IMG/VR virus record: IMGVR_UViG_3300048672_001051 | Coordinates: 165,657 to 229,656 of that record | DNA length: 64,000 nt | Reading direction: 5' to 3' (one strand) | Shown: positions 5,267 to 20,778 of the stretch, piece by piece | Layout: every line of letters starts with the position of its first letter | Numbering within the stretch: the stretch's first letter is position 1 | Made by a program: the position numbers and the translations under genes | Notes under the pieces: generated by a model | The model's database searches: none | The model's input: the letters and a program-made list of their open reading frames with translations, nothing else | What the model was told of the DNA's origin: nothing

Positions 5267-5286
5267 TATAAATCTCTAAATTTTAA

Positions 5287-5697: not shown

Positions 5698-5714
5698 TAT
5701 AAAGTCCTTAGTAG

Positions 5715-6104
5715 CTACAAACTTCTTAAAGAAGTTATTAATGTTTGGTGCCCATTTAGATATAAAGATATATCATTAAAATGTTTAGAAGCGCCGTGTT
5801 GTTTAGTATCTAGTAAAAAATACATATATTGCTTATTTTGAAATACTAATTTATGTCTACGATTTGGTGGACCTATAGTGTAAATAGCATAAGTAATTTT
5901 ATTAACTTTTAAATATACGCTACAAACATAACCAAAACTGCTGTTAAAATTTGGTAATTTAATATACTTTCTTGATGCTAAAAATCTAACATAAGCCCAA
6001 AAGTCTTTAAGATTACCATTACTACTTAAAGACAGCATATAATTTGTTCTACTTCCAAGAGTATATTTATCAATTTCATTTAGTACAGTTTGAATTTTAT
6101 TCAT
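5715..6104 (-). CDS. LRxL-array paralog
   Basis: FWAYVRF, QHG, LRSL end; start placed at the ATG just after the upstream stop. Confidence 0.8.
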   Translation of the reverse strand: MNKIQTVLNEIDKYTLGSRTNYMLSLSSNGNLKDFWAYVRFLASRKYIKLPNFNSSFGYVCSVYLKVNKITYAIYTIGPPNRRHKLVFQNKQYMYFLLDTKQHGASKHFNDISLYLNGHQTLITSLRSL

Positions 6105-6105
6105 A

Positions 6106-6531
6106 TTACAATTCACTTAATTTTAAATTTGAAATATGTTTATCATTAACATAAATTAGATAAGAAGTAGTACCAATCTGCGCCATACCGTGAGACTCAT
6201 CCTGTTTTTTATAAGTTTTTTGATTTGACATACTAAGTAAACCAAAAGTATTGTCAGAACTATTAACATAACCTACAACTTTTAAGCTGTGCGGTGCTAT
6301 AAGGTGTCCAGCAATTTTTAATTCTAAATCTTCTAGATTAAAAAAAGTGTAACGTTTATAAAATCGCAGAGTACCAAAAAATTTCATTAAATTTTTATAA
6401 TTATTTAATGAAATTTTTTTCAAAGATATCAAAGCATTTGTTGCAAAGTATGAACTAACTACAGAATTTTGCTCTGCAATAGCCTCTATTTCACCTAATA
6501 TTTGTAAACATGAATCTTTAGTTTCTAGCAT
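6106..6531 (-). CDS. LRxL-array paralog
   Basis: FFGTLRF, SHG, LSEL end. Confidence 0.8.
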   Translation of the reverse strand: MLETKDSCLQILGEIEAIAEQNSVVSSYFATNALISLKKISLNNYKNLMKFFGTLRFYKRYTFFNLEDLELKIAGHLIAPHSLKVVGYVNSSDNTFGLLSMSNQKTYKKQDESHGMAQIGTTSYLIYVNDKHISNLKLSEL

Positions 6532-6546
6532 AATTTGTAATAATCC

Positions 6547-6927
6547 TTAAAGATTTCTTAATGTTCTATATGCAGGTACCCTACAGCCTTCAAAATAGAA
6601 GGTTGTTATATTACCTGTCTTAGAGCAGCCGTGTATAACATTTTTAGAATAAAAATTAACTCTAATAAAAGATACTGAAAAACCTACACAACTATTATTA
6701 CTTGTTAGGTAGTAACTTACTGTATTATCTGTTGAAATTATAGCACCATAGCTTTTAGAGCACAGGTACATCTCAAATAAGCCTCTAGATATTTTTTTTA
6801 AATAGCGCACTTTAGCCCAAAAATACTTATATTCACCAGCATCTAAATGTTTTTTTAAAGTTTGGATACTCTTATCTTCGTATATATCTAAATCTATTAT
6901 ATATTTCAAAACATCTTGTGGGGTCAT
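6547..6927 (-). CDS. LRxL-array paralog
   Basis: FWAKVRY, IHG, LRNL end. Confidence 0.8.
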   Translation of the reverse strand: MTPQDVLKYIIDLDIYEDKSIQTLKKHLDAGEYKYFWAKVRYLKKISRGLFEMYLCSKSYGAIISTDNTVSYYLTSNNSCVGFSVSFIRVNFYSKNVIHGCSKTGNITTFYFEGCRVPAYRTLRNL

Positions 6928-7409
6928 AAGTCTCTCAATCTTAAGTTTTTTGGGGCGTAGCAGTCTGGTTTAAATAAAAATTTAAATTTTATAGACTGGG
7001 CTTCGTATACAGTACCGTGTGACCCAGTAAATTTTGTTTGAAAATGTTTAGAATATGTATGCACTACTAACCCTACGTTGTTTAAATTTTTACCATTTGC
7101 GTAATAACTACAGTTTTCTTTATAATAATATCCAGACATATTTAAATTAAGTCTAAAATAGGTTGGAAGTTGATAATTTATATATCTTGCATACCCCCAA
7201 AATTTTTTAAAATCTTTGTCCATAAAAAATTTTAAAAGTTTATCGTATTTTGCGCTTGATACCGTGTCTAGTGCATAAAAATATTGCAAAACTTTTAAAG
7301 GATTAACAATAACTGTGTAGTTAAAGCTTTTATAAAAAAGCATTAAAGTTTTTGTAGAATTATCATATATCTTAATATTTAAAATATAGTTTATAAGCTT
7401 ATTAAACAT
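6924..7409 (-). CDS. LRxL-array paralog
   Basis: FWGYARY, SHG, LRDL end. Confidence 0.8.
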   Translation of the reverse strand: MFNKLINYILNIKIYDNSTKTLMLFYKSFNYTVIVNPLKVLQYFYALDTVSSAKYDKLLKFFMDKDFKKFWGYARYINYQLPTYFRLNLNMSGYYYKENCSYYANGKNLNNVGLVVHTYSKHFQTKFTGSHGTVYEAQSIKFKFLFKPDCYAPKNLRLRDL

Positions 7410-7411
7410 AG

Positions 7412-7810
7412 TTATAAGTACCTTAAATTTGAAATATGTATAAGGTCACCGTCTAGATAATAAGCTACCTCAGAGGAGTTGTGCTGATATGTGCCGTGCC
7501 TTGAAGAGTTTTTTAAAAAATAATTAAAATAATATTTATTGCTTTTAACTAAGCCAATTAAATCTCTAGCTGTATTTATAGTGTATAGTGCGTTTTCACC
7601 CGGAGTGTTTGCACTCCCCGCTACATTATAAAAGTTAGTTAATTCATAAAAATGTACTATATATCTTAAATATTTTAAAGCTTCGTTAAACATTAAATTT
7701 TTAATATAGTCTTCAGCAGTTTTTATATGACTAAAGTGTATCTGAGGTATTTGTTTTAAAATTTTTAAAATCTGCTGAGGTTTTAAATTATTAAAATCTG
7801 TTGTAATCAT
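7412..7810 (-). CDS. LRxL-array paralog
   Basis: RHG, YLDG, LRYL end. Confidence 0.8.
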   Translation of the reverse strand: MITTDFNNLKPQQILKILKQIPQIHFSHIKTAEDYIKNLMFNEALKYLRYIVHFYELTNFYNVAGSANTPGENALYTINTARDLIGLVKSNKYYFNYFLKNSSRHGTYQHNSSEVAYYLDGDLIHISNLRYL

Positions 7811-8178
7811 AAATTCCTTAAACCTGTATACGGTATTTTTTTACCCATCAGATATAACCTTGTATTCTTGCGATCAACATCATCTTTAAAACTTCCATGT
7901 TGCATATTATTACTTGTAAAATATTTTAAATATTTATATTCTAAATAGCCGACTTTATAAAAATCCTTAGAAGTGCCTATAAAAAAAGTATGCCAATTAT
8001 TAATATCTCTAGTTTGACCGGTTTTAAATTTGCCTAGGTTTAGATGAGGAATTAAATAATATCTAGCGCGCTCCCAAAATAATTTAATATCATTTGTAAG
8101 GTAAATTTTATTCAGTGCATTAAAAATTGAAGCATATTTTAAATATTCTAAAACTTTTTCTGGTGTGTCGTAAATCAT
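7807..8178 (-). CDS. LRxL-array paralog
   Basis: FWERARY, QHG, LRNL end. Confidence 0.8.
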   Translation of the reverse strand: MIYDTPEKVLEYLKYASIFNALNKIYLTNDIKLFWERARYYLIPHLNLGKFKTGQTRDINNWHTFFIGTSKDFYKVGYLEYKYLKYFTSNNMQHGSFKDDVDRKNTRLYLMGKKIPYTGLRNL

Positions 8179-8190
8179 TTTATAAGCCTA

Positions 8191-8622
8191 TTAAAGATTT
8201 CTTAAAGTAGTTTTTAAACTTAACTTTTGTCCATAAATATAGTGAAAAGCTGAAGTAATTTTATAATATTCAAAAATGTTGATATCAAAAAATTGTCCAT
8301 GAGGCAAACTTGCAGTGTAGTAACCTTTTTTTGTAGCCCTTTTATAAAGTCCAAATCTTTCTGAGTTATTTTTAATATAATAGTTTGGTGCGTCATTATA
8401 GTCGAACGCTACATAACCTTTAGCAGTATGTGAATTTAAAAATTTTGCATCTAAGCGCCAACGCATAGTGTTAATATATCTAATATTATTCCAAAAATTA
8501 TTTAAATCATCGTTAATAATATTTGTAACTAATTTTTCATAAGTTTTATTATTAAGATTATTTTTTATATATTTTAAAATATCAAATATTTCTCGAGCTT
8601 CTTCAACACTTACTTTACCCAT
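8191..8622 (-). CDS. LRxL-array paralog
   Basis: FWNNIRY, PHG, LRNL end. Confidence 0.8.
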   Translation of the reverse strand: MGKVSVEEAREIFDILKYIKNNLNNKTYEKLVTNIINDDLNNFWNNIRYINTMRWRLDAKFLNSHTAKGYVAFDYNDAPNYYIKNNSERFGLYKRATKKGYYTASLPHGQFFDINIFEYYKITSAFHYIYGQKLSLKTTLRNL

Positions 8623-8623
8623 A

Positions 8624-9013
8624 TTATAATTCCTTTAAAGCTACATTTAAAATATTATTGTTAACCAACAACTCGTAACGTCGCCTATTTAGTTTTGTTG
8701 TTGCAGGTAAAACTCTACCATTCATAAAAGTTTTATGACTGCGGTTGGCTATTACGAGGCCAACTTTTAAGTTATTACTTTTTATGTAAAAAGTGCTTAA
8801 CATACTATGAGTTATAACAAAAGCTTTACCGATGTTGTAAATACCTAAATCAATTTTTAATTTATAATAGGATTTTATTCCACGCGCAAACATCCAAAAT
8901 AACTTATCGTTTTTAGATAACAATTCACGTCTTAGCTTATAAAATTCTAAATAAACTTGAGAATGATTTCTTAAAAGTTCATCCATAAATTCTTCAGGTG
9001 TGTCAAAAACCAT
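8624..9013 (-). CDS. LRxL-array paralog
   Basis: FWMFAR, LKEL end. Confidence 0.8.
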   Translation of the reverse strand: MVFDTPEEFMDELLRNHSQVYLEFYKLRRELLSKNDKLFWMFARGIKSYYKLKIDLGIYNIGKAFVITHSMLSTFYIKSNNLKVGLVIANRSHKTFMNGRVLPATTKLNRRRYELLVNNNILNVALKEL

Positions 9014-9025
9014 TGCATAATGCTC

Positions 9026-9412
9026 CTATATATATCTTAAATTATTTACATTCAAATTTGAACCATTAATAAAATATACACCTGAAACTTTACTAAATCC
9101 GTTTAGCATGTTTTTATTATAAAAAGAACTCGAAGAATCACGGTTGTGTAGTCCAAATTTTACAAAATTTTTTTTAAAATAGTAAAAATTTCTAAAAGAG
9201 TTGCTTGCAAAACGTCCGGTAGATATTTTAGAATTTTTACTGACAGGTTCTAAATCTAAAATACAGTTATTAGTATATCGGATAATTTCCCAAAACTTTT
9301 TATAATCACCTTCGTTAATACTATTTAATAATCTTACACAGAAAGAGTCTTTAGCGCCTAAATTATTTTCAATATATTTAACTATATTAAATATTTCTAC
9401 AACTTCAGTCAT
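9026..9412 (-). CDS. LRxL-array paralog
   Basis: FWEIIRY, FING, LRYI end. Confidence 0.8.
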   Translation of the reverse strand: MTEVVEIFNIVKYIENNLGAKDSFCVRLLNSINEGDYKKFWEIIRYTNNCILDLEPVSKNSKISTGRFASNSFRNFYYFKKNFVKFGLHNRDSSSSFYNKNMLNGFSKVSGVYFINGSNLNVNNLRYI

Positions 9413-9414
9413 AA

Positions 9415-9789
9415 CTACAAATCTCTTAATTTTAAAAATTTTGGTAAAGGTTTATTATCAATAATAAACCTACCCCTAGTATTTTGTCCGTGATAGCAGT
9501 CATTTTTAAAATATTGTACTTTACGGTCATTATAATGTTTTCCAAATCTCTGTCGACGACTGTTTACATAAAATTTATCGTTAAATAAACTGTATTTTGC
9601 AAAACCAGCTTTACGTTTATCGGATAAAATTTTTAACTCTTGAGTAAATTCAATATGTCTACAAATTTTCCAAAAATCTTCTAAAGATTTTTGGAAAATA
9701 ACTTCAAGAATTTTTTTAAGACCGGGAGATTTATTACCCAAGCTTTTTTGAAATTCTTTATATGTTTGAAATATTTCTTCATGATCCAT
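9415..9789 (-). CDS. LRxL-array paralog
   Basis: FWKICRH, YHG, LRDL end. Confidence 0.8.
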   Translation of the reverse strand: MDHEEIFQTYKEFQKSLGNKSPGLKKILEVIFQKSLEDFWKICRHIEFTQELKILSDKRKAGFAKYSLFNDKFYVNSRRQRFGKHYNDRKVQYFKNDCYHGQNTRGRFIIDNKPLPKFLKLRDL

Positions 9790-9790
9790 T

Positions 9791-10216
9791 TTATATATAC
9801 CTTAAGTTTTTTACAGATAGAGGTCGGCCATTAATAATAATTCCAGTTTCACTGCTAGTACCATGATACTGACTATTATTAAAAAAATTTAATTCGCCAT
9901 TCCAGTTATCAAAACCTAAAATACAATGGTCTTTAACATAATTAGTTACAGTTAAAGTTTTACCAGAAATAGCTTTACCAGTAGGATATTTATTAAATAT
10001 CCTACTTAGGTTTAGCTCTTCATTTAAATTTAAATTTAAATAAATATGTCTAACTACACACCAAAACAAATTTATATTTGGAGGTTCAGCCAAAAGGCTT
10101 AGTCTTAATACTTCAACACTAACTTGTGTATCATAAGCTAAAGAATCGTAACAGTTATCTTCAGCTATAAGATTATTAATATAGTTTAAAAATTCTTCAC
10201 ATTCTAATATGTCCAT
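9791..10216 (-). CDS. LRxL-array paralog
   Basis: FWCVVRH, YHG, LRYI end. Confidence 0.8.
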   Translation of the reverse strand: MDILECEEFLNYINNLIAEDNCYDSLAYDTQVSVEVLRLSLLAEPPNINLFWCVVRHIYLNLNLNEELNLSRIFNKYPTGKAISGKTLTVTNYVKDHCILGFDNWNGELNFFNNSQYHGTSSETGIIINGRPLSVKNLRYI

Positions 10217-10596
10217 TATAAATACCTTAAGTTAGTAACATTGCACGCGACAGCATTTACATAAAATCTTCTTGTGTGTTGACAATAACCGTGAACTTTA
10301 CCTAAAAATCTAGCGCGGTACAAATAGCCTGATACTCCTGGGAGCCGAATAACGCCAAAAACTATAGAATTACTATTTACGTAAATTTTAAGGTCTTCAG
10401 CATGTCGGTTACAGACTCCAGCTTCATATTCATATAGTGTAAAAGTAAAATTACATAAATATTTAAAGTATCTTGCAACTTCCCAAAATCTTTTGAAAGA
10501 CTTTTTAATTAAAAGATTTTCCAAATATTCATAATCACGGTGGCTTAAGTGTATAAATCTTTCTAAAACTTCAGTTGCTTTTTGAAACTCACTCAT
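10216..10596 (-). CDS. LRxL-array paralog
   Basis: FWEVARY, VHG, LRYL end; start placed at MSEFQ. Confidence 0.8.
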   Translation of the reverse strand: MSEFQKATEVLERFIHLSHRDYEYLENLLIKKSFKRFWEVARYFKYLCNFTFTLYEYEAGVCNRHAEDLKIYVNSNSIVFGVIRLPGVSGYLYRARFLGKVHGYCQHTRRFYVNAVACNVTNLRYL

Positions 10597-10598
10597 TC

Positions 10599-10982
10599 TT
10601 ATAAATACCTTAAATTTGAACATTGAATATAAATATTTTTTATATAAAATTCAGGGTTAGTCAGACTGCCTGAGCAGCCATGTAAAGTATCATTCACGTG
10701 AAATTGCTTTTTTTCGCAGTAGTTGTGTCGCCCAATTCTTTTAAAATTACTGTTAAAATAACAAAATTTTTTGTCTGTTAAATCTAGACTATATCCACTA
10801 TTATATTTTCCAAAAGATACGTCGTACCTAAAACCGTGCTTAATATAACGAGCTACACTCCAAAATTTTTTTAAGTCTCCAGTTATTAAAATATTATTTA
10901 AAGTTTTTAATATACGTGTTGGGTACTTAAGTGTAGCCATATGGTCTATTATTACGTTTGGATCTTCAATAACTTGTAACAT
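10599..10982 (-). CDS. LRxL-array paralog
   Basis: FWSVARY, LHG, LRYL end. Confidence 0.8.
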   Translation of the reverse strand: MLQVIEDPNVIIDHMATLKYPTRILKTLNNILITGDLKKFWSVARYIKHGFRYDVSFGKYNSGYSLDLTDKKFCYFNSNFKRIGRHNYCEKKQFHVNDTLHGCSGSLTNPEFYIKNIYIQCSNLRYL

Positions 10983-10983
10983 T

Positions 10984-11346
10984 TTAAAGCTCTCTTAATT
11001 TTAAATCGTAAATTGGCTTACCGTTAATTTTGAAACCTAAATAACCTGTGCCATGCAATTTATCTTTATTTACAAACAAATGTCCAATTAAACATTTGTT
11101 TAGACCTACTCGCTCACTTTTTGAATTTACGTAAAAAGTTATTTGACTACTCATATTTTGTGAAAAACCAGAAGTGTGTGAATTTAACTTTAAGTGTGGA
11201 CACAGACCTTTTAAAAACCTTGCATATATCCAAAAAAATTTAGTATCACAACTTTTAACAATAGCTTTTAAATTTTTAAAAATAGTGTCATTAGACTCAA
11301 ACTTAATTTCGTTTAAAAAAGTTAATATTTCTAATTCTTGATTCAT
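10984..11346 (-). CDS. LRxL-array paralog
   Basis: FWIYARF, LHG, LREL end. Confidence 0.8.
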   Translation of the reverse strand: MNQELEILTFLNEIKFESNDTIFKNLKAIVKSCDTKFFWIYARFLKGLCPHLKLNSHTSGFSQNMSSQITFYVNSKSERVGLNKCLIGHLFVNKDKLHGTGYLGFKINGKPIYDLKLREL

Positions 11347-11348
11347 GC

Positions 11349-11732
11349 TTATAAATGCCTTAAACTTGTTATAGGTCGACTATTACTTTTTATATAAAAT
11401 TTTTTTGTAAAATTAGAATAGCCGTGTGCATAACCGTCAAGTCTAAATGTTTCACAAGATTTTCTCTCTAAAAGAAAAGTTTTACCAAATTTTCTGCCAG
11501 TACTATTTAAATAGTAAGCCCAATTATTATCTGATCTTTTGGCAAGACCAGACTCATATTCATATAATCCAATAGGAAGTCTTGATTCATATTTAATATA
11601 TCTAGCTATTTCCCAAAATATTTTAAAGCATTTCTGCTTTAAAATATAATTAAGATTAATGCAAATAATTTTGTAGCGCGCAAAATTTTCAAAATATTCT
11701 AAAACTCTGGTTGCTTTTTCAGATTCATTCAT
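11349..11732 (-). CDS. LRxL-array paralog
   Basis: FWEIARY, AHG, LRHL end. Confidence 0.8.
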   Translation of the reverse strand: MNESEKATRVLEYFENFARYKIICINLNYILKQKCFKIFWEIARYIKYESRLPIGLYEYESGLAKRSDNNWAYYLNSTGRKFGKTFLLERKSCETFRLDGYAHGYSNFTKKFYIKSNSRPITSLRHL

Positions 11733-11733
11733 A

Positions 11734-12132
11734 TTACAAGTACCTTAAGCTATTAACATGGTTAATAAAATTATTTAAAAAATATTTTTGCATAGTAAAA
11801 TTATAACCGTGAAGTTTGTTTTGAATAGTGAAATAACGTTGAGGATCTTTTCTATTGTCAACAACTTTACCTACTCGTCTGCTAATAGAATTAACATACG
11901 CATAGTAGGTATTTGAGCTGTTTATAGCTTTTCCAGCGCTATATTCTGCTAAGTCTAAAGTTATTAAAGATTGATATTTTAATTTCAAATATCTTACATA
12001 CTCCCAATAACGTTTAAAAATTCCTGTCTTTAAACCAAAATTATATTGCTCAGTTAAAAACTGCAAATTAAATTTCTCTTTAGAATTTTTAATTTGCATA
12101 AAAATATTTGCACCAAATGTCAAAACATTCAT
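11734..12132 (-). CDS. LRxL-array paralog
   Basis: YWEYVRY, LHG, LRYL end. Confidence 0.8.
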   Translation of the reverse strand: MNVLTFGANIFMQIKNSKEKFNLQFLTEQYNFGLKTGIFKRYWEYVRYLKLKYQSLITLDLAEYSAGKAINSSNTYYAYVNSISRRVGKVVDNRKDPQRYFTIQNKLHGYNFTMQKYFLNNFINHVNSLRYL

Positions 12133-12135
12133 CAG

Positions 12136-12570
12136 TTAAAGCTCTCTTAATTTTAAATTAAAAACATCTTCGTCATTAACACTAAATCCGAGACTATGAG
12201 TACCATGGCAGGTACTGTCTGTACAGTAGTACTTATGATCATCTGACGAGATATGCAAACCTATTGTAAAATTATCAGATTTTATATAACTAGTTGTTAT
12301 AAGTTTTATCGGATCTATAATAGCACCTACTGGGTACTTATTATAAAATTTATCTAAGTCTGCGTACCAACTAAATATATCATATGCATATCTGACTACG
12401 CCCCAAAAAAAGACTGAATTTAGAGGTTTTTGAGTTGCAATAAAATCTAGCCTATTTACAATATCTATAAGTGTTGGTGAACACTCACCTTCAATACTTA
12501 TTTTCACTATCTCTAAAACTTCTTTGAAGTATTTAACAACCTCTAAACACTCTTTTAATTTCAAATCCAT
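12136..12570 (-). CDS. LRxL-array paralog
   Basis: FWGVVRY, CHG, LREL end. Confidence 0.8.
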   Translation of the reverse strand: MDLKLKECLEVVKYFKEVLEIVKISIEGECSPTLIDIVNRLDFIATQKPLNSVFFWGVVRYAYDIFSWYADLDKFYNKYPVGAIIDPIKLITTSYIKSDNFTIGLHISSDDHKYYCTDSTCHGTHSLGFSVNDEDVFNLKLREL

Positions 12571-12571
12571 A

Positions 12572-12964
12572 CTATAAATGCCTTAAATGCAGGTCAATCA
12601 TGTCGCCATTAATAATAAAATAACTTTTATCGAGAGTATTACTTTGTCCATGGCTTGTACCTTTAAAACGAAAGCTGTGAGTTTTAATCCAGCCGGCTGC
12701 TACACAATTACCTAGTCTTATACCTGAAGTTGTACAGTAAAATTTTCCAAAAAATTTATTTGGTACTTGGCTAAAACCTTCAGAATATTTTTTTAAATCT
12801 ACATTTTTCGTATGACAATTTTTTAAATAACGAGCTGCTTGCCAAAATACTTTAGCACTTCTTTCAATATTAATGACATTTAATAAAATTTTATAAGCTT
12901 CCTCATTTTCTTTTTTAAAGTCTGTTAAAACTTTAAAAATTTCTAACGCTTGAACTTCATTCAT
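12572..12964 (-). CDS. LRxL-array paralog
   Basis: FWQAARY, SHG, LRHL end. Confidence 0.8.
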   Translation of the reverse strand: MNEVQALEIFKVLTDFKKENEEAYKILLNVINIERSAKVFWQAARYLKNCHTKNVDLKKYSEGFSQVPNKFFGKFYCTTSGIRLGNCVAAGWIKTHSFRFKGTSHGQSNTLDKSYFIINGDMIDLHLRHL

Positions 12965-12966
12965 AT

Positions 12967-13347
12967 TTACAGATACCTGAGAGATTTGATACGATTAGGA
13001 ATACCGTTTAAATAATATTTTTTATCTATTTGGTCATAGCCGTGAAGCTCACCTTTAATATAAAAATATTCACGATTATCAAAAATAGCGCGACCAAATC
13101 TTTCGAGAGAGCTTGATAAATATCCTGGACGTCTAGACTCTGAATTAAATATAGGTCCAGCAGTGTATTCTTTTAAATCTATTTCATGTCCAGCACACGC
13201 TTTAAAAAATCTCAGTATCATCCAGTATTTTTTAAAATTGGCAGTTTTTAATGCCAATTTAAATTCGTCTTTTAGTTCACTGCCTAGCTTATGACGCGTG
13301 TCCGGAATAAGTTGAAAAATATGCTGTGCAAATAGTTCTTCTCTCAT
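12967..13347 (-). CDS. LRxL-array paralog
   Basis: YWMILRF, LHG, LRYL end. Confidence 0.8.
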   Translation of the reverse strand: MREELFAQHIFQLIPDTRHKLGSELKDEFKLALKTANFKKYWMILRFFKACAGHEIDLKEYTAGPIFNSESRRPGYLSSSLERFGRAIFDNREYFYIKGELHGYDQIDKKYYLNGIPNRIKSLRYL

Positions 13348-13799
13348 TATAACTCTCTTAGTCTTAAAGTATTTTTTAGTGCGCGATCATTTATATTGAA
13401 ACTAATACTATTATTAATACTGCAAGTCCCATGCTTCATATCTTTAAGTCTATAACTTGTACTCTCCAAGTAATAATCCAAACCTATTAGTTTAAAATCT
13501 GTTGTAAGATAACTTACAATTTTTAAATCTGTCGGTGATCTAGCCAAACCTGCAGGATATTTATTTAAAGTTTTGTCGAAATAATAAAAATAATTTGCCA
13601 AATTTAAATAGACATAACGGGTTATCTGCCAAAAACAAATAATACTTGGACTAGGAGATTTAAAAATGTAGTCTAAAATTTTACAAGCAAGCGATAATTC
13701 ATCAATATATTTTATACGAACATTTTTAAGCATTTCAGGCGTTTCTAAATATTCTTTAAAATATCTTAAGATTTTTTCAGAGTCTTCTAGTTGTGTCAT
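13347..13799 (-). CDS. LRxL-array paralog
   Basis: FWQITRY, KHG, LREL end. Confidence 0.8.
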   Translation of the reverse strand: MTQLEDSEKILRYFKEYLETPEMLKNVRIKYIDELSLACKILDYIFKSPSPSIICFWQITRYVYLNLANYFYYFDKTLNKYPAGLARSPTDLKIVSYLTTDFKLIGLDYYLESTSYRLKDMKHGTCSINNSISFNINDRALKNTLRLREL

Positions 13800-13801
13800 A
13801 A

Positions 13802-14179
13802 TTACAAATCTCTCAGTTTTAAATTAGAATTTAAAACACAATTATTTATTTTTAAAATAAATATTTTTGAAGCCTTATTAACATACACGCCGTGCATTCC
13901 ACCGTTATTTTGAAAAAATTTTAAATTAATATTGTCATATTCGCCGAAAGACCTGAGATAACTATTAAAATAATATTTTCGATTAGTGCCAGGCGATACA
14001 TACAAACCAGCTCTTGTTAGAAAATTTGGCCGTACTGGACGGCCAACATCATATTGTAATTCTCTTAAAACACCTAGGAATTTAGTTGTCTCACCGTCAG
14101 CTAACATTTTTAAACATAAAATATATGCATACGTATTTTTCGGAATATTTTGTAATAAATCTAAAAATAATATTTTCAT
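13802..14179 (-). CDS. LRxL-array paralog
   Basis: FLGVLR, MHG, LRDL end. Confidence 0.8.
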   Translation of the reverse strand: MKILFLDLLQNIPKNTYAYILCLKMLADGETTKFLGVLRELQYDVGRPVRPNFLTRAGLYVSPGTNRKYYFNSYLRSFGEYDNINLKFFQNNGGMHGVYVNKASKIFILKINNCVLNSNLKLRDL

Positions 14180-14586
14180 TATAAATGCCTTAATTCTCTA
14201 GTTTTTACATCACGGCTGTTAATAATAAAAATAAAGCCTCTCTCAATGTCAAAAACCCCATGTTTTCGACTTTGTTTGTAATGCCTTCTAGCTACACTAT
14301 TAAATTTAGCCATACCAATTACTTTGTCTTGTTTGTTTACATAATAATGATAATTACCTAATATTGATGTAGCTAAGCCTGAACGCATGTGGCCTATATC
14401 TACACCCGAAGGCTTTATAGCTTTATGGTAATTATAATGTCTAATAATCTCCCAAAATTTTTTAAAATTGTTAGTAGCAATTAAACTTTCTAATTTTCTA
14501 GTAGTTTTTTTGTCAATACTTGGTTGATTATACTCTTGTATAATTTTTAAAATTTCATAAGGATTTGTAGTAATCATTTGCCACAC
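14179..14586 (-). CDS. LRxL-array paralog
   Basis: FWEIIRH, KHG, LRHL end. Confidence 0.8.
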   Translation of the reverse strand: MWQMITTNPYEILKIIQEYNQPSIDKKTTRKLESLIATNNFKKFWEIIRHYNYHKAIKPSGVDIGHMRSGLATSILGNYHYYVNKQDKVIGMAKFNSVARRHYKQSRKHGVFDIERGFIFIINSRDVKTRELRHL

Positions 14587-14598
14587 CTTTGTTAATAT

Positions 14599-14985
14599 TT
14601 ATAAATACCTTAGATTTTTTTTGTAAAAAAAATCATTATTAATATACATGGTAGTAATATTATTCAGGAAAGCCATGCCGTGAAAATAATTATTTTTAAA
14701 AAATAAACATTCTTTATTAATACCAGTCTTGTGTAAACCTATTCTTAAGCCTAAGGAGTTAATATAAAAACTTTCATTGCCTGAGTTTAGGCTAACAAAA
14801 CCGCTTGCCTTACTTCCTAGCGGTATTTTTAAATCATAATTTTGATTAACATACCGACATACTTCCCAAAATTTTTTAGTATTATTTTGATAAATCAATT
14901 GTGATAGTATTGCAGGGTAATCTTTTAAAGTAATATACTTTTTTGTATATTTTTCAACTTCTTTTATAATTTCTAAGGGTTGCAT
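14599..14985 (-). CDS. LRxL-array paralog
   Basis: FWEVCRY, FHG, LRYL end; start placed at MQPLE. Confidence 0.8.
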   Translation of the reverse strand: MQPLEIIKEVEKYTKKYITLKDYPAILSQLIYQNNTKKFWEVCRYVNQNYDLKIPLGSKASGFVSLNSGNESFYINSLGLRIGLHKTGINKECLFFKNNYFHGMAFLNNITTMYINNDFFYKKNLRYL

Positions 14986-14987
14986 TT

Positions 14988-15383
14988 CTAGAGATTCCTT
15001 AAAGACTTTGTTGGGCATTCAGAATTATTAATATAATTTTGAAAATAAGAATTCACAGTACGAACTCCGTGTAATTTTCTATTTTTAAAAAATAATTTTG
15101 CTTTATGATGGATTGATAAACCCACCACCTTACCTTTACTATTTAAATAGTAACTACTAGATAAGTTATGCATACAAGCTAAGCCCACTAAACGTGGGCC
15201 TGTAATATATTTTAAATCAAATTCATTTTTTAAATATCTGTACAGTTCCCAAAATTCTTTAACATTTTTAGTAGTACTTAAAAGATTGTAAACATAATGA
15301 TTACAGTCAGCAGGATCTTTTAAAATTAATTTTAAAAGATCATATATTTCAATAATTTCGTGTTGTTCAATTGTCTTAGTCAC
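14988..15383 (-). CDS. LRxL-array paralog
   Basis: FWELYRY, LHG, LRNL end. Confidence 0.8.
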   Translation of the reverse strand: MTKTIEQHEIIEIYDLLKLILKDPADCNHYVYNLLSTTKNVKEFWELYRYLKNEFDLKYITGPRLVGLACMHNLSSSYYLNSKGKVVGLSIHHKAKLFFKNRKLHGVRTVNSYFQNYINNSECPTKSLRNL

Positions 15384-15752
15384 TTATAAATACCTTAAGC
15401 TCCGCCATGTCAGTAAATTGCCTTTAAGCCAGAATTTATGAAATCTATCATCGCAACCATGCCTATAGCCTTGACAATAAAAAACTCTATCTCGAGAGTT
15501 TCTTGCAAATCCAAATTCTCTAGCTTCTCTATTAATATAACTTAAAAAATTAGAATTAGAGTTATAAATTTTACCAGCAGTATACTCACCTAAAATTAAA
15601 TTAAACTTTTCTGTTTTTTTAATTCTACGAGCTACACTCCAAAATTCTTTAAAATTTTGGTTAAGAAGACATTCTTGCAAAAGTCTAGTGTCAATATGGT
15701 AACTAAATCTTAAGTGGTCTAAAACATTTTTAGCTGATTCTAATTCAGTCAT
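15384..15752 (-). CDS. LRxL-array paralog
   Basis: FWSVARR, RHG, LRYL end. Confidence 0.8.
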   Translation of the reverse strand: MTELESAKNVLDHLRFSYHIDTRLLQECLLNQNFKEFWSVARRIKKTEKFNLILGEYTAGKIYNSNSNFLSYINREAREFGFARNSRDRVFYCQGYRHGCDDRFHKFWLKGNLLTWRSLRYL

Positions 15753-15753
15753 A

Positions 15754-16230
15754 TCATAAATACCTTAGCCTAGTCACATTACTTCGTATTCCATCAATAT
15801 AAAAATCAGGTGCATTGAATCTTTTATATGCGCCATGTCTAATATTATTTTTAAAATAACATGATTCATTATCAGACCTTTGACACAGACCTATCATGCC
15901 ACTATTTTTTAATTTATAATAAAAATTATTATAACGCATAAACTTACCATTAAAATAATGTTGTAAGTTTATTTCAGGGCAATAAGAAGTACTAATATAT
16001 TTTATTTTAGGCCAAAAATTTTTGGTATTATTGTCTGATAGAGCATTTTTAAAAAGTCGCAAAATATCTACAGACTTTAAAGATCTTTGATAAACAGTTC
16101 TAACTATATCTTCACGAGTGTGACACTTTTTTAAAATTTCTTTTGTATTACAAGGATTGTAAAAAAAAGGAAAAGGACTTGGTGACAATATGGTTGAATA
16201 AGCCATAGACGTAATATCTGTAGGGTACAT
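15754..16230 (-). CDS. LRxL-array paralog
   Basis: FWPKIKY, RHG, YIDG, LRYL end. Confidence 0.8.
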   Translation of the reverse strand: MYPTDITSMAYSTILSPSPFPFFYNPCNTKEILKKCHTREDIVRTVYQRSLKSVDILRLFKNALSDNNTKNFWPKIKYISTSYCPEINLQHYFNGKFMRYNNFYYKLKNSGMIGLCQRSDNESCYFKNNIRHGAYKRFNAPDFYIDGIRSNVTRLRYL

Positions 16231-16461: not shown

Positions 16462-16620
16462 AAAAATGACTCGTTATTGTAAACAAAAAAGGGGTTTTAA
16501 GCTAAGATGCTAAAGCTTTGCACCCCTTAAAATAAGTATACTTAAATAATATTGCTTAAAAAAATGACTCGTTATTGTGATAGAAAAATTTTTTAAAAAC
16601 AATTCTAACAACAATAACGA
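16462..16620. promoter_or_regulatory. 19-bp direct repeat plus inverted half-site at the head of the array
   Basis: AAAAATGACTCGTTATTGT at 16462-16480 and 16560-16578; inverted ACAATAACGA at 16611-16620; terminator-like AAGGGG...CCCCTT hairpin between the copies. Confidence 0.55.
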
Positions 16621-16654: not shown

Positions 16655-16948
16655 TTAAAGCTTTAAAAAGAATTTATTAGAATTTTCTAAATTAGAAAGC
16701 AGATATACGTGCTTAATATTCAGAAAAGAGTCAATAAATGAATAACCTAAAATATTATTTTGATTTGAAGTTTTAAGAACCTTCAAATCTTTAATAAGAT
16801 TCAAATTATTAATGAAATAATTCAAATAACTATGATTACCTTGAACATTTGGAAAATTAGAATATAAATCTTCTAAAATTTTCCGAGTAGTATTCAAGTT
16901 ACGAGCACGTGTTAAAACATACCGCGGGCGAGTCATTAAAACCTCCAC
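16655..16948 (-). CDS. Hypothetical protein
   Basis: 97-aa ORF; GGAGG precedes an internal ATG (MTRPR). Confidence 0.55.
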   Translation of the reverse strand: MEVLMTRPRYVLTRARNLNTTRKILEDLYSNFPNVQGNHSYLNYFINNLNLIKDLKVLKTSNQNNILGYSFIDSFLNIKHVYLLSNLENSNKFFLKL

Positions 16949-17154: not shown

Positions 17155-20100
17155 TTACATACCTAAACTTTTCATTAGTGCATCTAAGTCATCTGGCGGA
17201 ACGTTACCATTTGAATTAGCGCCTTCTTGAATGTTAAGGTCACTAAACTCTTCAGGATCTGCACAGAAAGCCTCAAATTTCTGACGGATCTCGAAAAGTT
17301 TTGAAACAAGTGAACCGAAATATGTGTTTTCAGAAATGAATGTCTCCCACATTTTCAATTCACTTTCGTCTACCGGAATTCGACCCTTATTGTATAAAGA
17401 GATAAAATTCCGACAACCTTTTAAAGCCTTCGAATGAGAACCCCAAGTGATAATAAACAAAAGTTTATTAATATCACCAAGGGTCATCCGATATTCAGGT
17501 TTTTGCAATTCAGCAATAATAATCTTACGATTTTCAGGCAATGCCATATTGCGCAGAAAGAACATTTCAAAGTCCTTACTACCATTTTTGGCATGCTTAA
17601 TTGCTTCAATAACTTTTTCCTGAACCAAACGAGTATAAGCAAAAGAGAATTGTTTAAATTCTAAATCGCTAAGGGGCTGCAATAAAACAGGGTTAGGGAC
17701 ATTAGCAGTTTTGTATAAACCTTTATTTGCGACAAAGAATGCTTGATAACACTGCATTAAAGCAGTAGCAGTCCAAATGTCTAGGGTGGCAGGGCCAATA
17801 TTAGCTTTAGCAACAGAGGCATTAAGCAAATACTGTTGATAGCATGGAATGCCATTTTGAGGTGCCATTGGAACTTTGTTCAGTTTATAAACATGTTGAC
17901 CAATAGGTAACAACTTGTTAGTTGTTTCATACTCACCATCAATATACTCTTCATTCCAACATAATTCTTGCTCAAGAGGTTGAGGCCGAACAAATCGACG
18001 AAGAATTTCTTGACCAATTGGATTAGGAATAGCTAATGGTAGAGCATCACCATCACAATCACTTCGTGCTTCCAAAGCAATAGTAGGGCTGATTAACAGA
18101 ATGTCACTATTGTACCGAGGATTCAAATACGCGTGCAAATCAATATTATGCACTGTCTTCAAATACATTCGGAACAAGTTAACATCCCAAATACGAGGTA
18201 CTTGTAGCTGCATTTCCCAAAGTACAGGATTACGCACTGCTAAGCTACGAGGAACTTCGTTTAAAGCACGATCTACAGCTTGTTTGTCTAAAGTGCCATG
18301 CTCATTTAAACGCGCTAAGATGTCAATCTGAGAACTAACAAGACGTTCCCAATCATCACCAAAGGCTTCATTCGAGATACGTTCAAATTTAGACTGACTC
18401 ATAACAACAACAACATCAGGTGGTAGATAATGATCAACTACCTGTTTCATACCAAAGCCTTTCATACGAGGCTTGATAAGATGTTGAATTACCATTTGAG
18501 CGGCTTCTTCGTCTGAATAAAGCGTCGATTTAACTGCACGCAAATACTCGTCTAAAGCATAAGACTGTTGTCGATTGTTGTCAGGCATTAACATGTTTCG
18601 GAAAACTTTATTATACCCTTTCAGGTATTTATAGTTTTCACGAACAAGTCGCAAAATCTTAGACAATCGAATTAAAATGTCTGGATAATTTGTTTCGCCA
18701 CTCATAAGTCGACCAGTAAACCGGTTCAACAAATAAGCACTAGGCATCCGGACACAAGGGCCGCCGAGAGAGCTGAAATCCAAATAAAAACCATTCGGAT
18801 TATATTCAGCATTTAACAAGCGAGAATTAGATGGAAAAATTGCCTTCTTTGTTAATACAAAGTCGTCAGGTCCATACATAGGATTCTTACTAATTAAATC
18901 GGCAGGGGTGATAATTGGAAGTTCATCAACTTCTGAAAATACAGCGCGATCATCTGTTAGAATTTTAAACAATTCATAAACAGCTTTAATAGAATCAGGA
19001 TCACGATAACTTTCAAAAATATGATTTGCAAGTTCAAGCGATACGCCACCTTGGAATGTTAACATCTTCAAGGTTTCAAACATTACAGATTGAGGTTTCC
19101 AATCTGCGTAGATGTCAGTAATTTCAGTGTAGTTGATATAGACAAGTCCAATCTCAACGTTAACTTCATTACCAAAATTATCTACATATTTGTATTCAGG
19201 CAAAGACTGAGACGCAGCATTAATTTCAGCTTCATCCAATGAATTTAAATAGCCTGAATTACCACGTTTAACACTGGGTTTATAGTAGCCCAGCTTAACA
19301 GCTAGAGCAGCTCGTGCTAAAACAATGGTGTTTGATGCAGCTTTAACAGCATTCATACCAGTAACAATGTCCGGTACGAGAAAATCTTTTTCATTCCAAG
19401 TGTTATCTGTCGAGGAATCTCCAAGATATTCAGAAGCATTTGGATAACGTTCAGCAATAGCAGAGTCATCAAAAACATTCTTAAACATAATCTTACCAGT
19501 ATTGGTAAGAACTTTAGTAACACCTTTAAGTCCGGTGCTACTTGTGATACGGCAGTTACCTGCACGGCAAATACCTTTAAAACGAATTTTAAAAGAATTT
19601 GCAATGCTTGTCGCATCAATAGAAAGTACAGTAATGGTTTTAAAATTGTACAAGTCGATAGGACTTGACAAGTTATTCAACCCAACTGTAAATGTTTTAA
19701 AAGAAGGCTGATAAGTCTTGCCAGCTTCTACTAAAACTTCAGAAAAAATTTCTTCAATACTGAAAGAAACTTCTAAAGCTTGAGCTGCAATAGTTGCTGC
19801 AATTTCAATTTCACCGGAAACAAAACGTTTAGTGTCTGGGTCCATTGGATGAAATACAATAAAAGCTTCACGTTGGCAATCGTCTTTACGAGTAAAGACG
19901 TCACCATTAATGATATAATCCTGTGTAAAAACAGAATTACTAGGGTTTTCAATCTTTAGATGCTCTCCTAAAGAATGAGTTTTAAGACGAGCAGCTAACG
20001 ACTGTTTATTATCGAAAATAGTCAAGATCGAAGGAACTGTATCTCGAAGATTTTCAGAATAACCTGTGTTGCGAAACATAAAAGGCTGTTCACCTGTAAA

Positions 20101-20778
20101 CAGGCTAACAGTAGCAGTTTTAGACATACTACCTTCAGATGTCAGATGAATCTGACAATCACGGATAATATTTGGCCAATCTTTTTCACGAGGTTGTGAA
20201 TTAGAAATAATTTGGCCAAGAACAAACTTACCATTATTGATTTTGTCCAGATGTTGATTAAAACTAAGAATAACAAAAGAATGTTCAGATTTTTTCTGAG
20301 CATTAAAACTTACAGGCTTGGTATAATTTGCAAAAGACTGCAAATTATTAATATCAGTGTTTAACAAACCTGTATAGATGTCTTTGCTGTACTGTTGATA
20401 CATATTAAGACGATCTACTAAAATAAGATAAAATACTTGATTTTGATTAAGAATCAAATAATTATGATGACCAAAATAATCAATTCGACTATTAGAAGTC
20501 GAGCTGACTTCTACGAGAAAAGGATAATACGTTGTCTGCACTGGTGCAGTGCTAGGTGAAAACAATGTTTTACGAATAATAACTTCCATTGCATGAGTAT
20601 CACTGCGAGGGAAAGCTATAATAACATCATCATCAGCATTAATAGAATAATTGCACAGCCCACTGTAACCTTGAGGCAGGTGTCCAATAAGTTCTTCAGC
20701 TGTGCAATTTGCCGGAATATCACGAAAGGCTTGTGTGCGTACAATACCATCCAAACGTGCAATCGGAAATGAAGACAT
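17155..20778 (-). CDS. Single-chain two-barrel DNA-directed RNA polymerase 2 (putative)
   Basis: 1207 aa. RSDCDGD, AVRNPVL (beta'-like RxP), GNCRITSSTGLKGV (resembles beta GDKxxxRHGxKGV), KANIG and LVQEKVIEAIKH. Confidence 0.8.
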   Translation of the reverse strand: MSSFPIARLDGIVRTQAFRDIPANCTAEELIGHLPQGYSGLCNYSINADDDVIIAFPRSDTHAMEVIIRKTLFSPSTAPVQTTYYPFLVEVSSTSNSRIDYFGHHNYLILNQNQVFYLILVDRLNMYQQYSKDIYTGLLNTDINNLQSFANYTKPVSFNAQKKSEHSFVILSFNQHLDKINNGKFVLGQIISNSQPREKDWPNIIRDCQIHLTSEGSMSKTATVSLFTGEQPFMFRNTGYSENLRDTVPSILTIFDNKQSLAARLKTHSLGEHLKIENPSNSVFTQDYIINGDVFTRKDDCQREAFIVFHPMDPDTKRFVSGEIEIAATIAAQALEVSFSIEEIFSEVLVEAGKTYQPSFKTFTVGLNNLSSPIDLYNFKTITVLSIDATSIANSFKIRFKGICRAGNCRITSSTGLKGVTKVLTNTGKIMFKNVFDDSAIAERYPNASEYLGDSSTDNTWNEKDFLVPDIVTGMNAVKAASNTIVLARAALAVKLGYYKPSVKRGNSGYLNSLDEAEINAASQSLPEYKYVDNFGNEVNVEIGLVYINYTEITDIYADWKPQSVMFETLKMLTFQGGVSLELANHIFESYRDPDSIKAVYELFKILTDDRAVFSEVDELPIITPADLISKNPMYGPDDFVLTKKAIFPSNSRLLNAEYNPNGFYLDFSSLGGPCVRMPSAYLLNRFTGRLMSGETNYPDILIRLSKILRLVRENYKYLKGYNKVFRNMLMPDNNRQQSYALDEYLRAVKSTLYSDEEAAQMVIQHLIKPRMKGFGMKQVVDHYLPPDVVVVMSQSKFERISNEAFGDDWERLVSSQIDILARLNEHGTLDKQAVDRALNEVPRSLAVRNPVLWEMQLQVPRIWDVNLFRMYLKTVHNIDLHAYLNPRYNSDILLISPTIALEARSDCDGDALPLAIPNPIGQEILRRFVRPQPLEQELCWNEEYIDGEYETTNKLLPIGQHVYKLNKVPMAPQNGIPCYQQYLLNASVAKANIGPATLDIWTATALMQCYQAFFVANKGLYKTANVPNPVLLQPLSDLEFKQFSFAYTRLVQEKVIEAIKHAKNGSKDFEMFFLRNMALPENRKIIIAELQKPEYRMTLGDINKLLFIITWGSHSKALKGCRNFISLYNKGRIPVDESELKMWETFISENTYFGSLVSKLFEIRQKFEAFCADPEEFSDLNIQEGANSNGNVPPDDLDALMKSLGM

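What the first reader, a model, noticed from the sequence alone, without database searches (positions are those of the whole stretch)
16462..16620. Array leader: repeated 19-mer related to the promoter motif but on the opposite strand
AAAAATGACTCGTTATTGT occurs twice, 98 bp apart. It matches AAAATG-nnnn-GTTAT of the RNAP1-type motif (AAAATGGTCTGTTAT) but with a different core, and it points away from the array. One copy abuts the ATG of the truncated first array gene, a hairpin lies between the copies, and an inverted half-site follows. Candidates are an RNAP2-specific promoter (short or antisense RNA), an operator, or a recombination scar that truncated the first gene.
Basis: partly seen in the sequence, partly recalled or inferred. 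Interest (0 to 1): 0.6.

Follow-up and report, generated by a model that had tools for sequence, protein, structure and literature searches.

The report
Conserved tandem signal before phage gene array
The repeated 19-mer is real and is kept in at least four related giant phages, always just downstream of a phage RNA polymerase gene and reading toward the genes, so it is most likely a phage-specific start signal for transcription, not an antisense promoter or a recombination scar.

Summary
The 19-mer occurs exactly twice, 98 bp apart, and nowhere else in the 229.7-kb phage genome. One copy abuts the ATG of a half-length first array gene. A terminator-like hairpin lies between the copies and an inverted 10-mer follows.

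The interpretation needs revision. The likeness to the RNAP1-type promoter is not real: a matrix built from true sites scores them 27-49 bits and the 19-mers about -20 bits.

Comparative data show function. The core ACGAGTCA(TTTT) recurs on the gene-sense strand downstream of the homologous polymerase gene ("RNAP2", YonO-like) in four related phages whose RNAP2 is 84, 59, 42 and 35% identical. It is usually a tandem pair. In four phages the proximal copy abuts the ATG of the next gene, and those genes are of three unrelated kinds. Flanking coding DNA has diverged to about 60% at third positions.

Best reading (about 0.4): tandem promoters read toward the array by a phage polymerase, probably RNAP2, giving leaderless or near-leaderless mRNA. 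This parallels the single YonO promoter of SPbeta.

The scar idea is rejected. No transcription start data could be obtained.

The parts
16462..16480 (-). Proximal copy of the repeat. Read on the minus strand it is ACAATAACGAGTCATTTTT, and its last T touches the ATG of the first array gene. Conserved core ACGAGTCATTTT.
   Evidence: identical 18 nt in L003; core kept in L023, L024 and L028
16560..16578 (-). Distal copy of the repeat, 98 bp upstream of the proximal copy in the direction of the genes. No start codon follows it. Its 5' ten bases form the right arm of the palindrome.
   Evidence: identical in L003
16611..16620 (-). Inverted 10-mer (TCGTTATTGT on the minus strand), the left arm of the palindrome, centre 42 bp from the right arm. 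It contains the -10-like hexamer TATTGT.
   Evidence: sequence and 42-bp spacing identical in L003; absent in L023, L024 and L028
16568..16621 (-). AT-rich imperfect palindrome (hairpin A). As minus-strand RNA it folds at -16.5 kcal/mol (z -5.1) and is followed by a U7 run four bases after the stem.
   Evidence: 66-nt module with only 3 differences from L003; the sense strand is more stable than the antisense in both phages
16489..16528 (-). Hairpin B, like an intrinsic terminator on the minus strand (G/C-rich base, then T6-G-T3). It ends 8 nt before the proximal copy.
   Evidence: its 5' arm is not kept in L003; a much stronger hairpin sits in the same place in L024
16611..16638 (-). Sigma-70-like hexamer pair on the minus strand: TTGACT (16638-16633), 16 nt, TATTGT (16616-16611); 9 of 12 matches.
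   Evidence: the number of such matches in the region is no more than chance; TTGACG-17-TATTGT at the same place in L003; not seen in L023
16243..16461 (-). First array gene, 72 aa, homologous only to the C-terminal beta-hairpin half of the ~130-aa paralogs.
   Evidence: the first gene of the array in L003 is likewise C-terminal-half only
2426..16230 (-). About 36 tightly packed full-length paralogs, with no intergenic gaps above about 20 nt and no intergenic terminator-like hairpin (one weak candidate lies inside a gene near 12060). They form the presumed operon served by the leader.
16655..16936 (-). 93-aa gene between the RNAP2 gene and the leader (ATG 16936, Shine-Dalgarno GGAGG). Its fold weakly resembles the N-terminal half of a GNAT acetyltransferase, and it has no DNA-binding motif.
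17155..20778 (-). 1207-aa 'RNAP2', probably a single-chain two-barrel (YonO-like) RNA polymerase. GLKGVTK and D-x-D-G-D are invariant in 12 homologs.

Best explanation
The two 19-mers are tandem copies of a cis-acting signal that is read in the direction of the genes (the minus strand of the window). Its conserved core is ACGAGTCA followed by four or more T.

The most likely function is a promoter for a phage-encoded RNA polymerase, with the neighbouring YonO-like RNAP2 as the best candidate. Upstream transcripts would stop at the hairpin and T-run. New transcripts would start at or just after the T-run of the motif. From the proximal copy the mRNA of the first array gene would then begin at or within a few bases of its AUG, making it leaderless or nearly so. 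From the distal copy a short leader RNA would be made; in this phage it would run into hairpin B.

Shown here: the repeat is real, is unique in the genome, is under strong purifying selection, has a fixed orientation, and has a fixed place downstream of the RNAP2 gene.

Inferred: that it is a promoter, which polymerase reads it, and where transcription starts.
For: 1. Selection.
- In L003 (RNAP2 84% identical) the neighbouring 93-aa gene is 67% identical in DNA and about 60% at third positions. Both 18-nt motif copies are 100% identical, and the 66-nt palindrome module has 3 differences.

2. Depth of conservation.
- The core recurs downstream of the RNAP2 gene in L023 (59%; two copies), L024 (42%; one intergenic copy) and L028 (35%; two copies).
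- In these 35 kb ACGAGTCA occurs 7 times on the sense strand and 0 times on the antisense strand, against 0.36 expected per strand.

3. The motif goes with the place, not with the downstream gene.
- The gene after it is a half-length array gene (window, L003), a lipoprotein-like gene (L023), an unrelated 96-aa gene (L024) or a DksA/TraR-like gene (L028).

4. Terminator-then-promoter layout.
- In L024 a -26 kcal/mol hairpin plus T7 ends 4 nt before the motif, and the ATG follows the motif directly. Only the motif is left to serve as promoter for the next operon.
- In the window, hairpin B plus its T-run ends 8 nt before the proximal copy.

5. Not tied to translation.
- In L028 both copies lie 70-95 nt upstream of a gene that has its own Shine-Dalgarno sequence, so the motif does not need an adjacent ATG.

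6. Shared reader.
- An A-to-G change in L023 is present in both of its copies, as expected if one factor reads both.

7. One promoter would suffice.
- The array has no internal gaps or intergenic terminator-like hairpins.

8. Precedent.
- YonO of SPbeta starts its 37 late genes from a single site just downstream of yonO. Its promoter sequence was not determined in that study (PMC5467207).
Against: - No transcription start data.
- The motif is absent elsewhere in this genome, so it is not a general late promoter. It is also absent before the structural-gene block.
- It was not found in the available flanks of L026, L027, L029 or ME3.
- A 12-nt core unchanged at 35% polymerase identity is unusually stable for a phage-polymerase promoter.
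- The distal copies would start at T rather than at a purine.
- One L023 copy has AATT instead of TTTT.
- The palindrome and the sigma-70-like hexamers, conserved in the window and L003, suggest a protein-binding operator. The promoter model does not need them.
Confidence: 0.4

Rival explanations
1. The repeats are operator sites on DNA. A sequence-specific phage regulator binds the three 10-mers (two direct, one inverted) and controls a host-type promoter whose -10 hexamer lies inside the inverted copy. The palindrome brackets the start site, and the third site sits at the first ATG.
For: - TTGACT-16-TATTGT on the minus strand is matched by TTGACG-17-TATTGT in L003, although the sequence around it does not align.
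- The half-site spacing of 42 bp (four helical turns) is identical in both phages.
- The whole 66-nt palindrome is 95% conserved.
- L023 has a 14-bp perfect palindrome that includes the 5' half of its proximal copy.
Against: - The hexamer pair is only 9 of 12, and such pairs are as frequent as chance in this region.
- The palindrome and hexamers are absent in L023, L024 and L028, while the direct motif persists.
- The copy-to-copy spacing varies (98, 81, 45 and 26 bp), which argues against fixed looping geometry.
- The conserved part (ACGAGTCATTTT) lies mostly outside the 10-mer shared with the inverted copy.
- The adjacent 93-aa protein shows no DNA-binding fold.
Confidence: 0.17
2. The element acts in RNA at the translation start. 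The proximal copy is the initiation region of the next gene, with GAG 7 nt before the AUG, and is bound by a translational repressor or a processing nuclease. The distal copy is a decoy or cooperative site. In this phage the inverted 10-mer can pair with either copy.
For: - In four phages, with three unrelated kinds of downstream gene, the ATG follows ACGAGTCA after exactly 4-5 T.
- Hairpin A is more stable on the sense strand in both phages (-16.5 and -15.4 against -13.0 and -11.5 kcal/mol). The two substitutions in L003 improve pairing, G.U to A-U and U.U to G.U.
Against: - Five of the nine intergenic copies have no start codon after them.
- In L028 the served gene has its own Shine-Dalgarno sequence 70 nt downstream.
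- GAG alone is a weak ribosome-binding site next to the AGGAG used by other genes of this phage.
Confidence: 0.15
3. The element is a sequence-specific pause or termination signal for a phage polymerase: a conserved 8-mer followed by a U-run, doubled for efficiency. It would close the RNAP2 operon. Downstream genes would be expressed by read-through.
For: - The layout, an invariant 8-mer followed at once by T4-T7 in 8 of 9 intergenic copies, resembles the class II termination signals of T7 RNA polymerase (my own knowledge).
- It always lies after the RNAP2 operon and next to hairpin terminators.
- It occurs as tandem copies.
Against: - It leaves the 36-gene array, and the operon after the L024 terminator, without any room for a promoter.
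- It does not explain why the ATG distance is fixed.
Confidence: 0.1
4. One reading: a promoter on the + strand that fires away from the array and makes antisense RNA against the 93-aa and RNAP2 genes.
For: - Read on the + strand, the conserved core starts with AAAATG, as do the RNAP1-type promoters.
- Its orientation relative to the RNAP2 gene is constant in five phages, so an antisense feedback loop is not excluded.
- RNAP1 and RNAP2 are distant paralogs.
Against: - PWM scores are -20 and -24 bits; the invariant GGTC, the upstream AAAGC and the downstream GAGG are all missing.
- The GTTAT part is not kept in L028, and AAAATG is not kept in one L023 copy.
- No + strand sigma-70-like site is present.
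- This model does not explain the ATG abutment or the preceding T-runs.
- In L024 an antisense transcript would meet a two-way terminator after about 20 nt.
Confidence: 0.08
5. The repeat is a recombination scar or chance duplication that truncated the first array gene and has no function.
For: The first gene lacks the N-terminal helical half, and the homology between the window and L003 ends exactly at the ATG.
Against: - Both copies are 100% kept in L003 while neutral sites are about 60% identical.
- The same motif abuts unrelated genes in L023 and L024.
- The first gene is half-length in L003 too.
- No coding remnant of the missing half is found in the leader.
Confidence: 0.02

Closest known systems
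The YonO promoter (PYONO) of Bacillus prophage SPbeta
   Same: A single-chain two-barrel polymerase gene is followed, after one small gene and in the same direction, by a start site that serves a long run of genes (37 in SPbeta, at least 36 here). There are very few such sites per genome (PMC5467207).
   Different: The promoter sequence of PYONO was not determined in that study, so no sequence comparison is possible. RNAP2 has no detectable sequence match to solved polymerases. No start site has been mapped here. The genes served are a paralog array, not known late genes.
Promoters of T7-type single-subunit polymerases
   Same: Similar length and layout: a conserved recognition block, then a 4-5 nt A/T stretch, then a purine. 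The 8-mer differs by one base from the ACGACTCA block of the T7 consensus (my own knowledge of the T7 promoter).
   Different: No T7-type polymerase gene was detected in the genome, though the PF00940 search was not conclusive. There are only two copies per genome. The resemblance is probably a coincidence.
The RNAP1-type promoter of this same phage: (AAAAGC)n, then AAAATGGTC, then TGAGG
   Same: A short conserved phage-specific motif in intergenic DNA. Both contain AAAATG when the 19-mer is read on the + strand.
   Different: Ten copies, all on the minus strand between 24603 and 50547, each 20-40 nt upstream of a gene with a strong Shine-Dalgarno sequence. The 19-mer lacks every invariant position beyond AAAATG and scores about -20 bits.
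Operators and iterons of phage regulators, and translational operators of the T4 RegA type
   Same: Two or three copies of a 10-19 bp site clustered at one control region, one of them overlapping a start codon.
   Different: No cognate binding protein has been identified. The spacing is not conserved. The core is conserved over a far wider range of phages than the palindrome.

Membership tests
RNAP1-type promoter of this phage | Invariant AAAATGGTC core with AAAGC upstream and (T)GAGG downstream | tested here: not met
   A PWM built from 9 sites gives true sites 27-49 bits and the two 19-mers -19.7 and -24.1 bits (ranks 5,731 and 13,813 of 459,250).
RNAP1-type promoter of this phage | Lies upstream of a gene on the same strand, with a 20-40 nt leader carrying AGGAG | tested here: not met
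   On the + strand no gene follows. On the minus strand the ATG follows with no leader.
Sigma-70-type promoter | -35 and -10 hexamers 16-18 nt apart | tested here: inconclusive
   There is none within or downstream of the 19-mers on the + strand. On the minus strand a 9/12 pair overlaps the inverted 10-mer. It is kept in L003 but not in L023, and such pairs are no more frequent than chance.
Intrinsic (hairpin) terminator, for hairpin B | G+C-rich stem followed directly by a T-run on the transcribed strand | tested here: met
   -15.6 kcal/mol, with T6-G-T3 on the minus strand only.
Intrinsic (hairpin) terminator, for hairpin B | Stem maintained in relatives | tested here: not met
   In L003 the 5' arm is lost and only a 5-bp stem remains. 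L024 has an unrelated strong hairpin at the same place.
Promoter of a YonO-like polymerase | A YonO-like (single-chain, two-barrel) polymerase is encoded by the phage | tested here: inconclusive
   D-x-D-G-D and GLKGVTK are invariant in 12 homologs. RNAP1 and RNAP2 align over that region. There are no Pfam or PDB sequence hits, and no structure was predicted.
Promoter of a YonO-like polymerase | The site lies downstream of the polymerase gene, co-directional, at the head of a long operon | tested here: met
   This holds in five phages. The array has no internal gaps or intergenic terminator-like hairpins.
Promoter of a YonO-like polymerase | Transcripts start at the site and depend on the polymerase | not testable with these tools
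T7-type promoter | A cognate T7-type polymerase gene is in the genome | tested here: not met
   PF00940 gave no match in the genome, but the tool warns that this does not prove absence.
Operator or iteron set | Repeated sites conserved together with a DNA-binding protein gene | tested here: inconclusive
   The sites are conserved. The adjacent 93-aa protein has a beta-alpha-alpha-beta-beta-beta fold with weak GNAT-like matches and no helix-turn-helix.

The most novel reading that the evidence does not exclude
ACGAGTCA followed by a T-run is the promoter of a YonO-like single-chain two-barrel RNA polymerase, conserved across a clade of giant phages. It fires so close to the start codon that it makes leaderless mRNAs. 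That would make it a sequence-defined promoter for this polymerase class, whose promoter was left undetermined in the SPbeta study.
Probability: 0.3. Interest if true: 0.75.

Novelty: new variant of a known kind. Interest (0 to 1): 0.55.

Why it matters
Single-chain two-barrel RNA polymerases (YonO, the crAss-like phage enzymes) are the smallest relatives of the cellular polymerases, and how they find their start sites is poorly known.

This element is a short, deeply conserved, strand-specific motif. It sits directly downstream of such a polymerase gene in five phages, which makes it a concrete candidate that can be tested on the bench.

If confirmed, it would:
- define a minimal promoter for this enzyme class;
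- explain how a 36-gene paralog array is switched on as one unit;
- add a case of programmed leaderless mRNA in a giant phage.

If it proves to be an operator or a terminator instead, it still marks the control point between the polymerase operon and the array.

Tried and rejected
- Close relatives by DNA or protein in the phage collection. None was found for the leader or the array. Only Acinetobacter phage ME3 matched RNAP2, at 31%, and it lacks the motif.
- Word searches with an array protein and with the 93-aa protein found only the query itself.
- IMG/VR and JGI scans with the 19-mer, the 18-mer, the conserved non-coding block, the tandem core, core+ATG, and protein patterns of the 93-aa and RNAP2 proteins gave nothing or only single chance hits in unrelated contexts.
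- A profile of the array was too divergent for the search for related loci. The genome search cannot draw relatives for a virus or reach L024's record.
- A coding remnant of the missing N-terminal half in the leader, and homology of the 93-aa protein to the array: both rejected.
- Small + strand ORFs (MTRYC...). They have no ribosome-binding site and their lengths are not conserved. Rejected.
- Pairing of the motif with the start of the 93-aa gene (9 nt shared). It is not kept in L003, so it is a coincidence.
- Genome-wide k-mer enrichment found other intergenic words (GACTATATCT, GACTAGTT) that are unrelated to the 19-mer.
- Rfam had nothing above threshold.
- A T7-type polymerase was not detected.
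- The folds of the 93-aa protein and of an array protein gave no PDB match with E below 0.001.
- The last contig look-up returned no DNA.
- The SPbeta PYONO region was not fetched for comparison.

Full report
**Setting**

The window is the last 64 kb of a single 229,656-bp contig with 34.7% G+C. The contig is a giant phage only distantly related to Acinetobacter phage vB_AbaM_ME3. From about 59,250 down to 250 almost all genes lie on the minus strand.

Two ORFs of about 1,200 aa carry a D-x-D-G-D motif: 51125-54760 and 17155-20778.
- In twelve homologs of the second ORF, D-x-D-G-D and a GLKGVTK motif are invariant.
- The first ORF aligns to that family over the same region (hhalign E 2e-5).
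- Pfam, PHROGs and PDB sequence searches are silent.

This is an inference from motifs, not from a structure.

Downstream of RNAP2 on the minus strand come:
- a perfect palindrome;
- a conserved non-coding block;
- a 93-aa gene;
- the 193-bp leader;
- an array of about 36 tightly packed paralogs of about 130 aa (2426-16461).

**The observation**

- The 19-mer is at 16462-16480 and 16560-16578. With up to 3 mismatches allowed, 0.03 matches are expected by chance.
- It has no other copy in the genome, even with four mismatches allowed.
- The similarity runs to 29 nt at 86%.
- An inverted copy of its last ten bases lies at 16611-16620, and that 10-mer occurs nowhere else in the genome.
- Copy 1 touches the ATG of ORF 16243-16461. 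That ORF matches only the C-terminal half of the array family.
- Between the copies is a hairpin at 16489-16528 (-15.6 kcal/mol). On the minus strand only, it is followed by T6-G-T3, so it looks like an intrinsic terminator for transcription toward the array.

**The claimed link to the RNAP1 motif**

It has one or more AAAAGC units, then AAAATGGTC, then [T/G][G/T]T, then TGAGG after two or three variable bases. It has ten copies, all on the minus strand between 24603 and 50547. Each lies 20-40 nt before a gene with a strong Shine-Dalgarno sequence.

A weight matrix from nine sites scores real sites at 27-49 bits. The next best position in the genome scores 12 bits. The two 19-mers score -19.7 and -24.1 bits, ranks 5,731 and 13,813 of 459,250 positions.

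The resemblance is therefore not evidence, and the direction inferred from it falls with it.

**Relatives**

A profile of the array family, searched against 1.84 billion proteins, found 13 foreign members. All lie on two contigs of one metagenome. One of these contigs, L003, covers the homologous junction.

Searching with RNAP2 gave further phages:

| Locus | RNAP2 identity |
|---|---|
| L022 (same phage as L003) | 84% |
| L023 | 59% |
| L024 | 42% |
| L026, L027, L029 | 36-37% |
| L028 | 35% |

**Window against L003**

- The 93-aa protein is 60% identical. Its gene is 67% identical in DNA and about 60% at third positions. The wider region is 77% identical.
- Against that background, both motif copies are identical over 18 nt.
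- The 66-nt block from the inverted 10-mer through the distal copy has three differences. The 42-bp spacing of the two palindrome arms is the same.
- The spacer has a 17-nt indel, so the copies are 81 bp apart instead of 98.
- The 5' arm of hairpin B is lost.
- Homology stops exactly at the ATG. The first gene of the L003 array has a different N-terminus but is again only the C-terminal half of the family.

**More distant phages**

- L023. After the homolog of the 93-aa gene come two copies of ACAGTAACGAGTCA, 45 nt apart. The proximal copy plus TTTT abuts the ATG of an 81-aa lipoprotein-like gene unrelated to the array. The A-to-G change is present in both copies.
- L024. The RNAP2 stop is followed by a -26 kcal/mol hairpin with T7, then four bases, then ACTATAACGAGTCATTTT, then the ATG of an unrelated 96-aa gene.
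- L028. Two copies of GACGAGTCATTTTT, 26 nt apart, lie at the end of a long non-coding stretch. They are 70-95 nt before a DksA/TraR-like gene that has its own Shine-Dalgarno sequence.
- Across these 35 kb, ACGAGTCA occurs seven times on the gene-sense strand and never on the other, against 0.36 expected per strand.
- The flanks available for L026, L027, L029 and ME3 lack the motif.

**What this shows**

The repeat is a functional element. Its invariant part is ACGAGTCA, usually followed by at least four T. It is read in a fixed orientation, that of the genes. It is tied to the position downstream of the RNAP2 gene rather than to any particular downstream gene. It tends to come in pairs.

The scar hypothesis is therefore rejected. 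The leader also holds no coding remnant of the missing domain, and the 93-aa gene is unrelated to the array.

**Mechanism**

I favour tandem promoters for a phage polymerase, firing toward the array. The reasons are these.
- The element follows terminator-like structures. In L024 it is the only sequence left between a strong terminator and the next ATG.
- In L028 it sits at promoter distance from a gene with a normal ribosome-binding site. This separates it from translation initiation.
- The array has no internal gaps or intergenic terminator-like hairpins, so it needs just one promoter.
- Both copies changed together in L023.
- SPbeta gives a precedent. YonO starts 37 late genes from one site just downstream of yonO, after one small gene, and the promoter sequence was left undetermined (PMC5467207).

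On this reading, having only two copies in the genome is not a refutation. The fixed 4-5 T between the core and the ATG in four phages would mean a start at or next to the A of the ATG, giving leaderless or near-leaderless mRNA.

The layout also recalls T7-type promoters: a recognition block, an A/T stretch and a purine. The 8-mer differs by one base from the T7 block (my own knowledge). No T7-type polymerase was detected, so I treat this as a coincidence.

**Weak points**

- There is no start-site evidence.
- The motif is absent before the structural genes.
- The core is unusually stable across very divergent polymerases.
- The distal copies would start at T.
- The promoter model does not use the palindrome or the conserved sigma-70-like hexamers (TTGACT-16-TATTGT here, TTGACG-17-TATTGT in L003). 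These features point to a DNA operator in the window/L003 lineage. They are missing in L023, L024 and L028.
- An RNA-level role at the start codon is supported by the ATG abutment and by a hairpin A that is more stable on the sense strand in both phages. It cannot explain the five copies that have no start codon.
- A sequence-specific terminator would fit the 8-mer plus U-run. It leaves no room for a promoter.
It explains neither the ATG abutment nor the preceding T-runs.

**Context of the array**

- A 44-sequence alignment gave a confident model (pLDDT 90.6): a three-helix bundle followed by beta-hairpin repeats that weakly resemble MORN or choline-binding repeats. No PDB match reached E below 0.001.
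- The half-length first gene is the beta-hairpin part alone.
- The 93-aa protein models as beta-alpha-alpha-beta-beta-beta with weak GNAT-like matches. It shows no DNA-binding motif.

**Verdict**

The element is a conserved control signal of a little-known clade of giant phages. It is worth a bench test, mainly as a candidate promoter for a YonO-like polymerase.

Noticed in passing
window 16995-17032 (minus strand), inside a conserved block at about 16975-17062: A 15-bp hairpin with a C5 loop lies between the RNAP2 gene and the 93-aa gene. It is 100% identical in L003 and is kept in L023 through three double (compensatory) changes. The surrounding ~90 nt are 98-100% identical to L003, far above the coding flanks. 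It is a candidate structured RNA or hairpin-type control site. Its 12-mer TGGTCTAACCCC recurs once, in another intergenic region (genome position 70128).
   Followed up: partly
window 17115-17144; L003 1-28; L023 about 7686-7710: A perfect 15+15 palindrome (-22 kcal/mol) lies right after the RNAP2 stop codon, with no T-run on either strand. The relatives have a different sequence there that is again a perfect palindrome, so the structure is conserved rather than the sequence.
   Followed up: partly
window 24603-50547, minus strand; tandem units at about 50551-50610: There are ten copies of the RNAP1-type promoter. One site is preceded by about ten tandem AAAAGC units. The site at 24603 is kept in L022.
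   Followed up: partly
window 2426-16230, gene junctions of the array: Nearly all array proteins end in Leu-Arg-(Tyr/His/Glu/Asp)-Leu. The AGG or AGA arginine codon lies 8-12 nt before the next ATG, so it can also serve as the next gene's ribosome-binding site. The conserved C-terminus may be constrained at both levels.
   Followed up: no
window 2426-16461; L002; L003: The array family (about 36 copies here and at least 14 in one metagenome phage) has no Pfam or PHROG match. Its confident model shows a three-helix bundle plus MORN-like or choline-binding-like beta-hairpins. In the searched databases it was found only in these two phages.
   Followed up: partly
L024 9813 and 10479: Two further copies of TAACGAGTCA lie on the sense strand inside a 653-aa ORF of the 216-kb sewage phage contig. 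They could be internal signals or chance; this was not examined.
   Followed up: no
L001 (phage ME3) 8052-12787: The ME3 homolog of RNAP2 is interrupted by an annotated endonuclease gene, so it is a split or intron-bearing polymerase gene.
   Followed up: no
window 52000-58000 against 2000-16000: G+C falls from about 50% at the head of the minus-strand block (around RNAP1) to 26-29% in the array. This is a very steep gradient within one phage genome.
   Followed up: no
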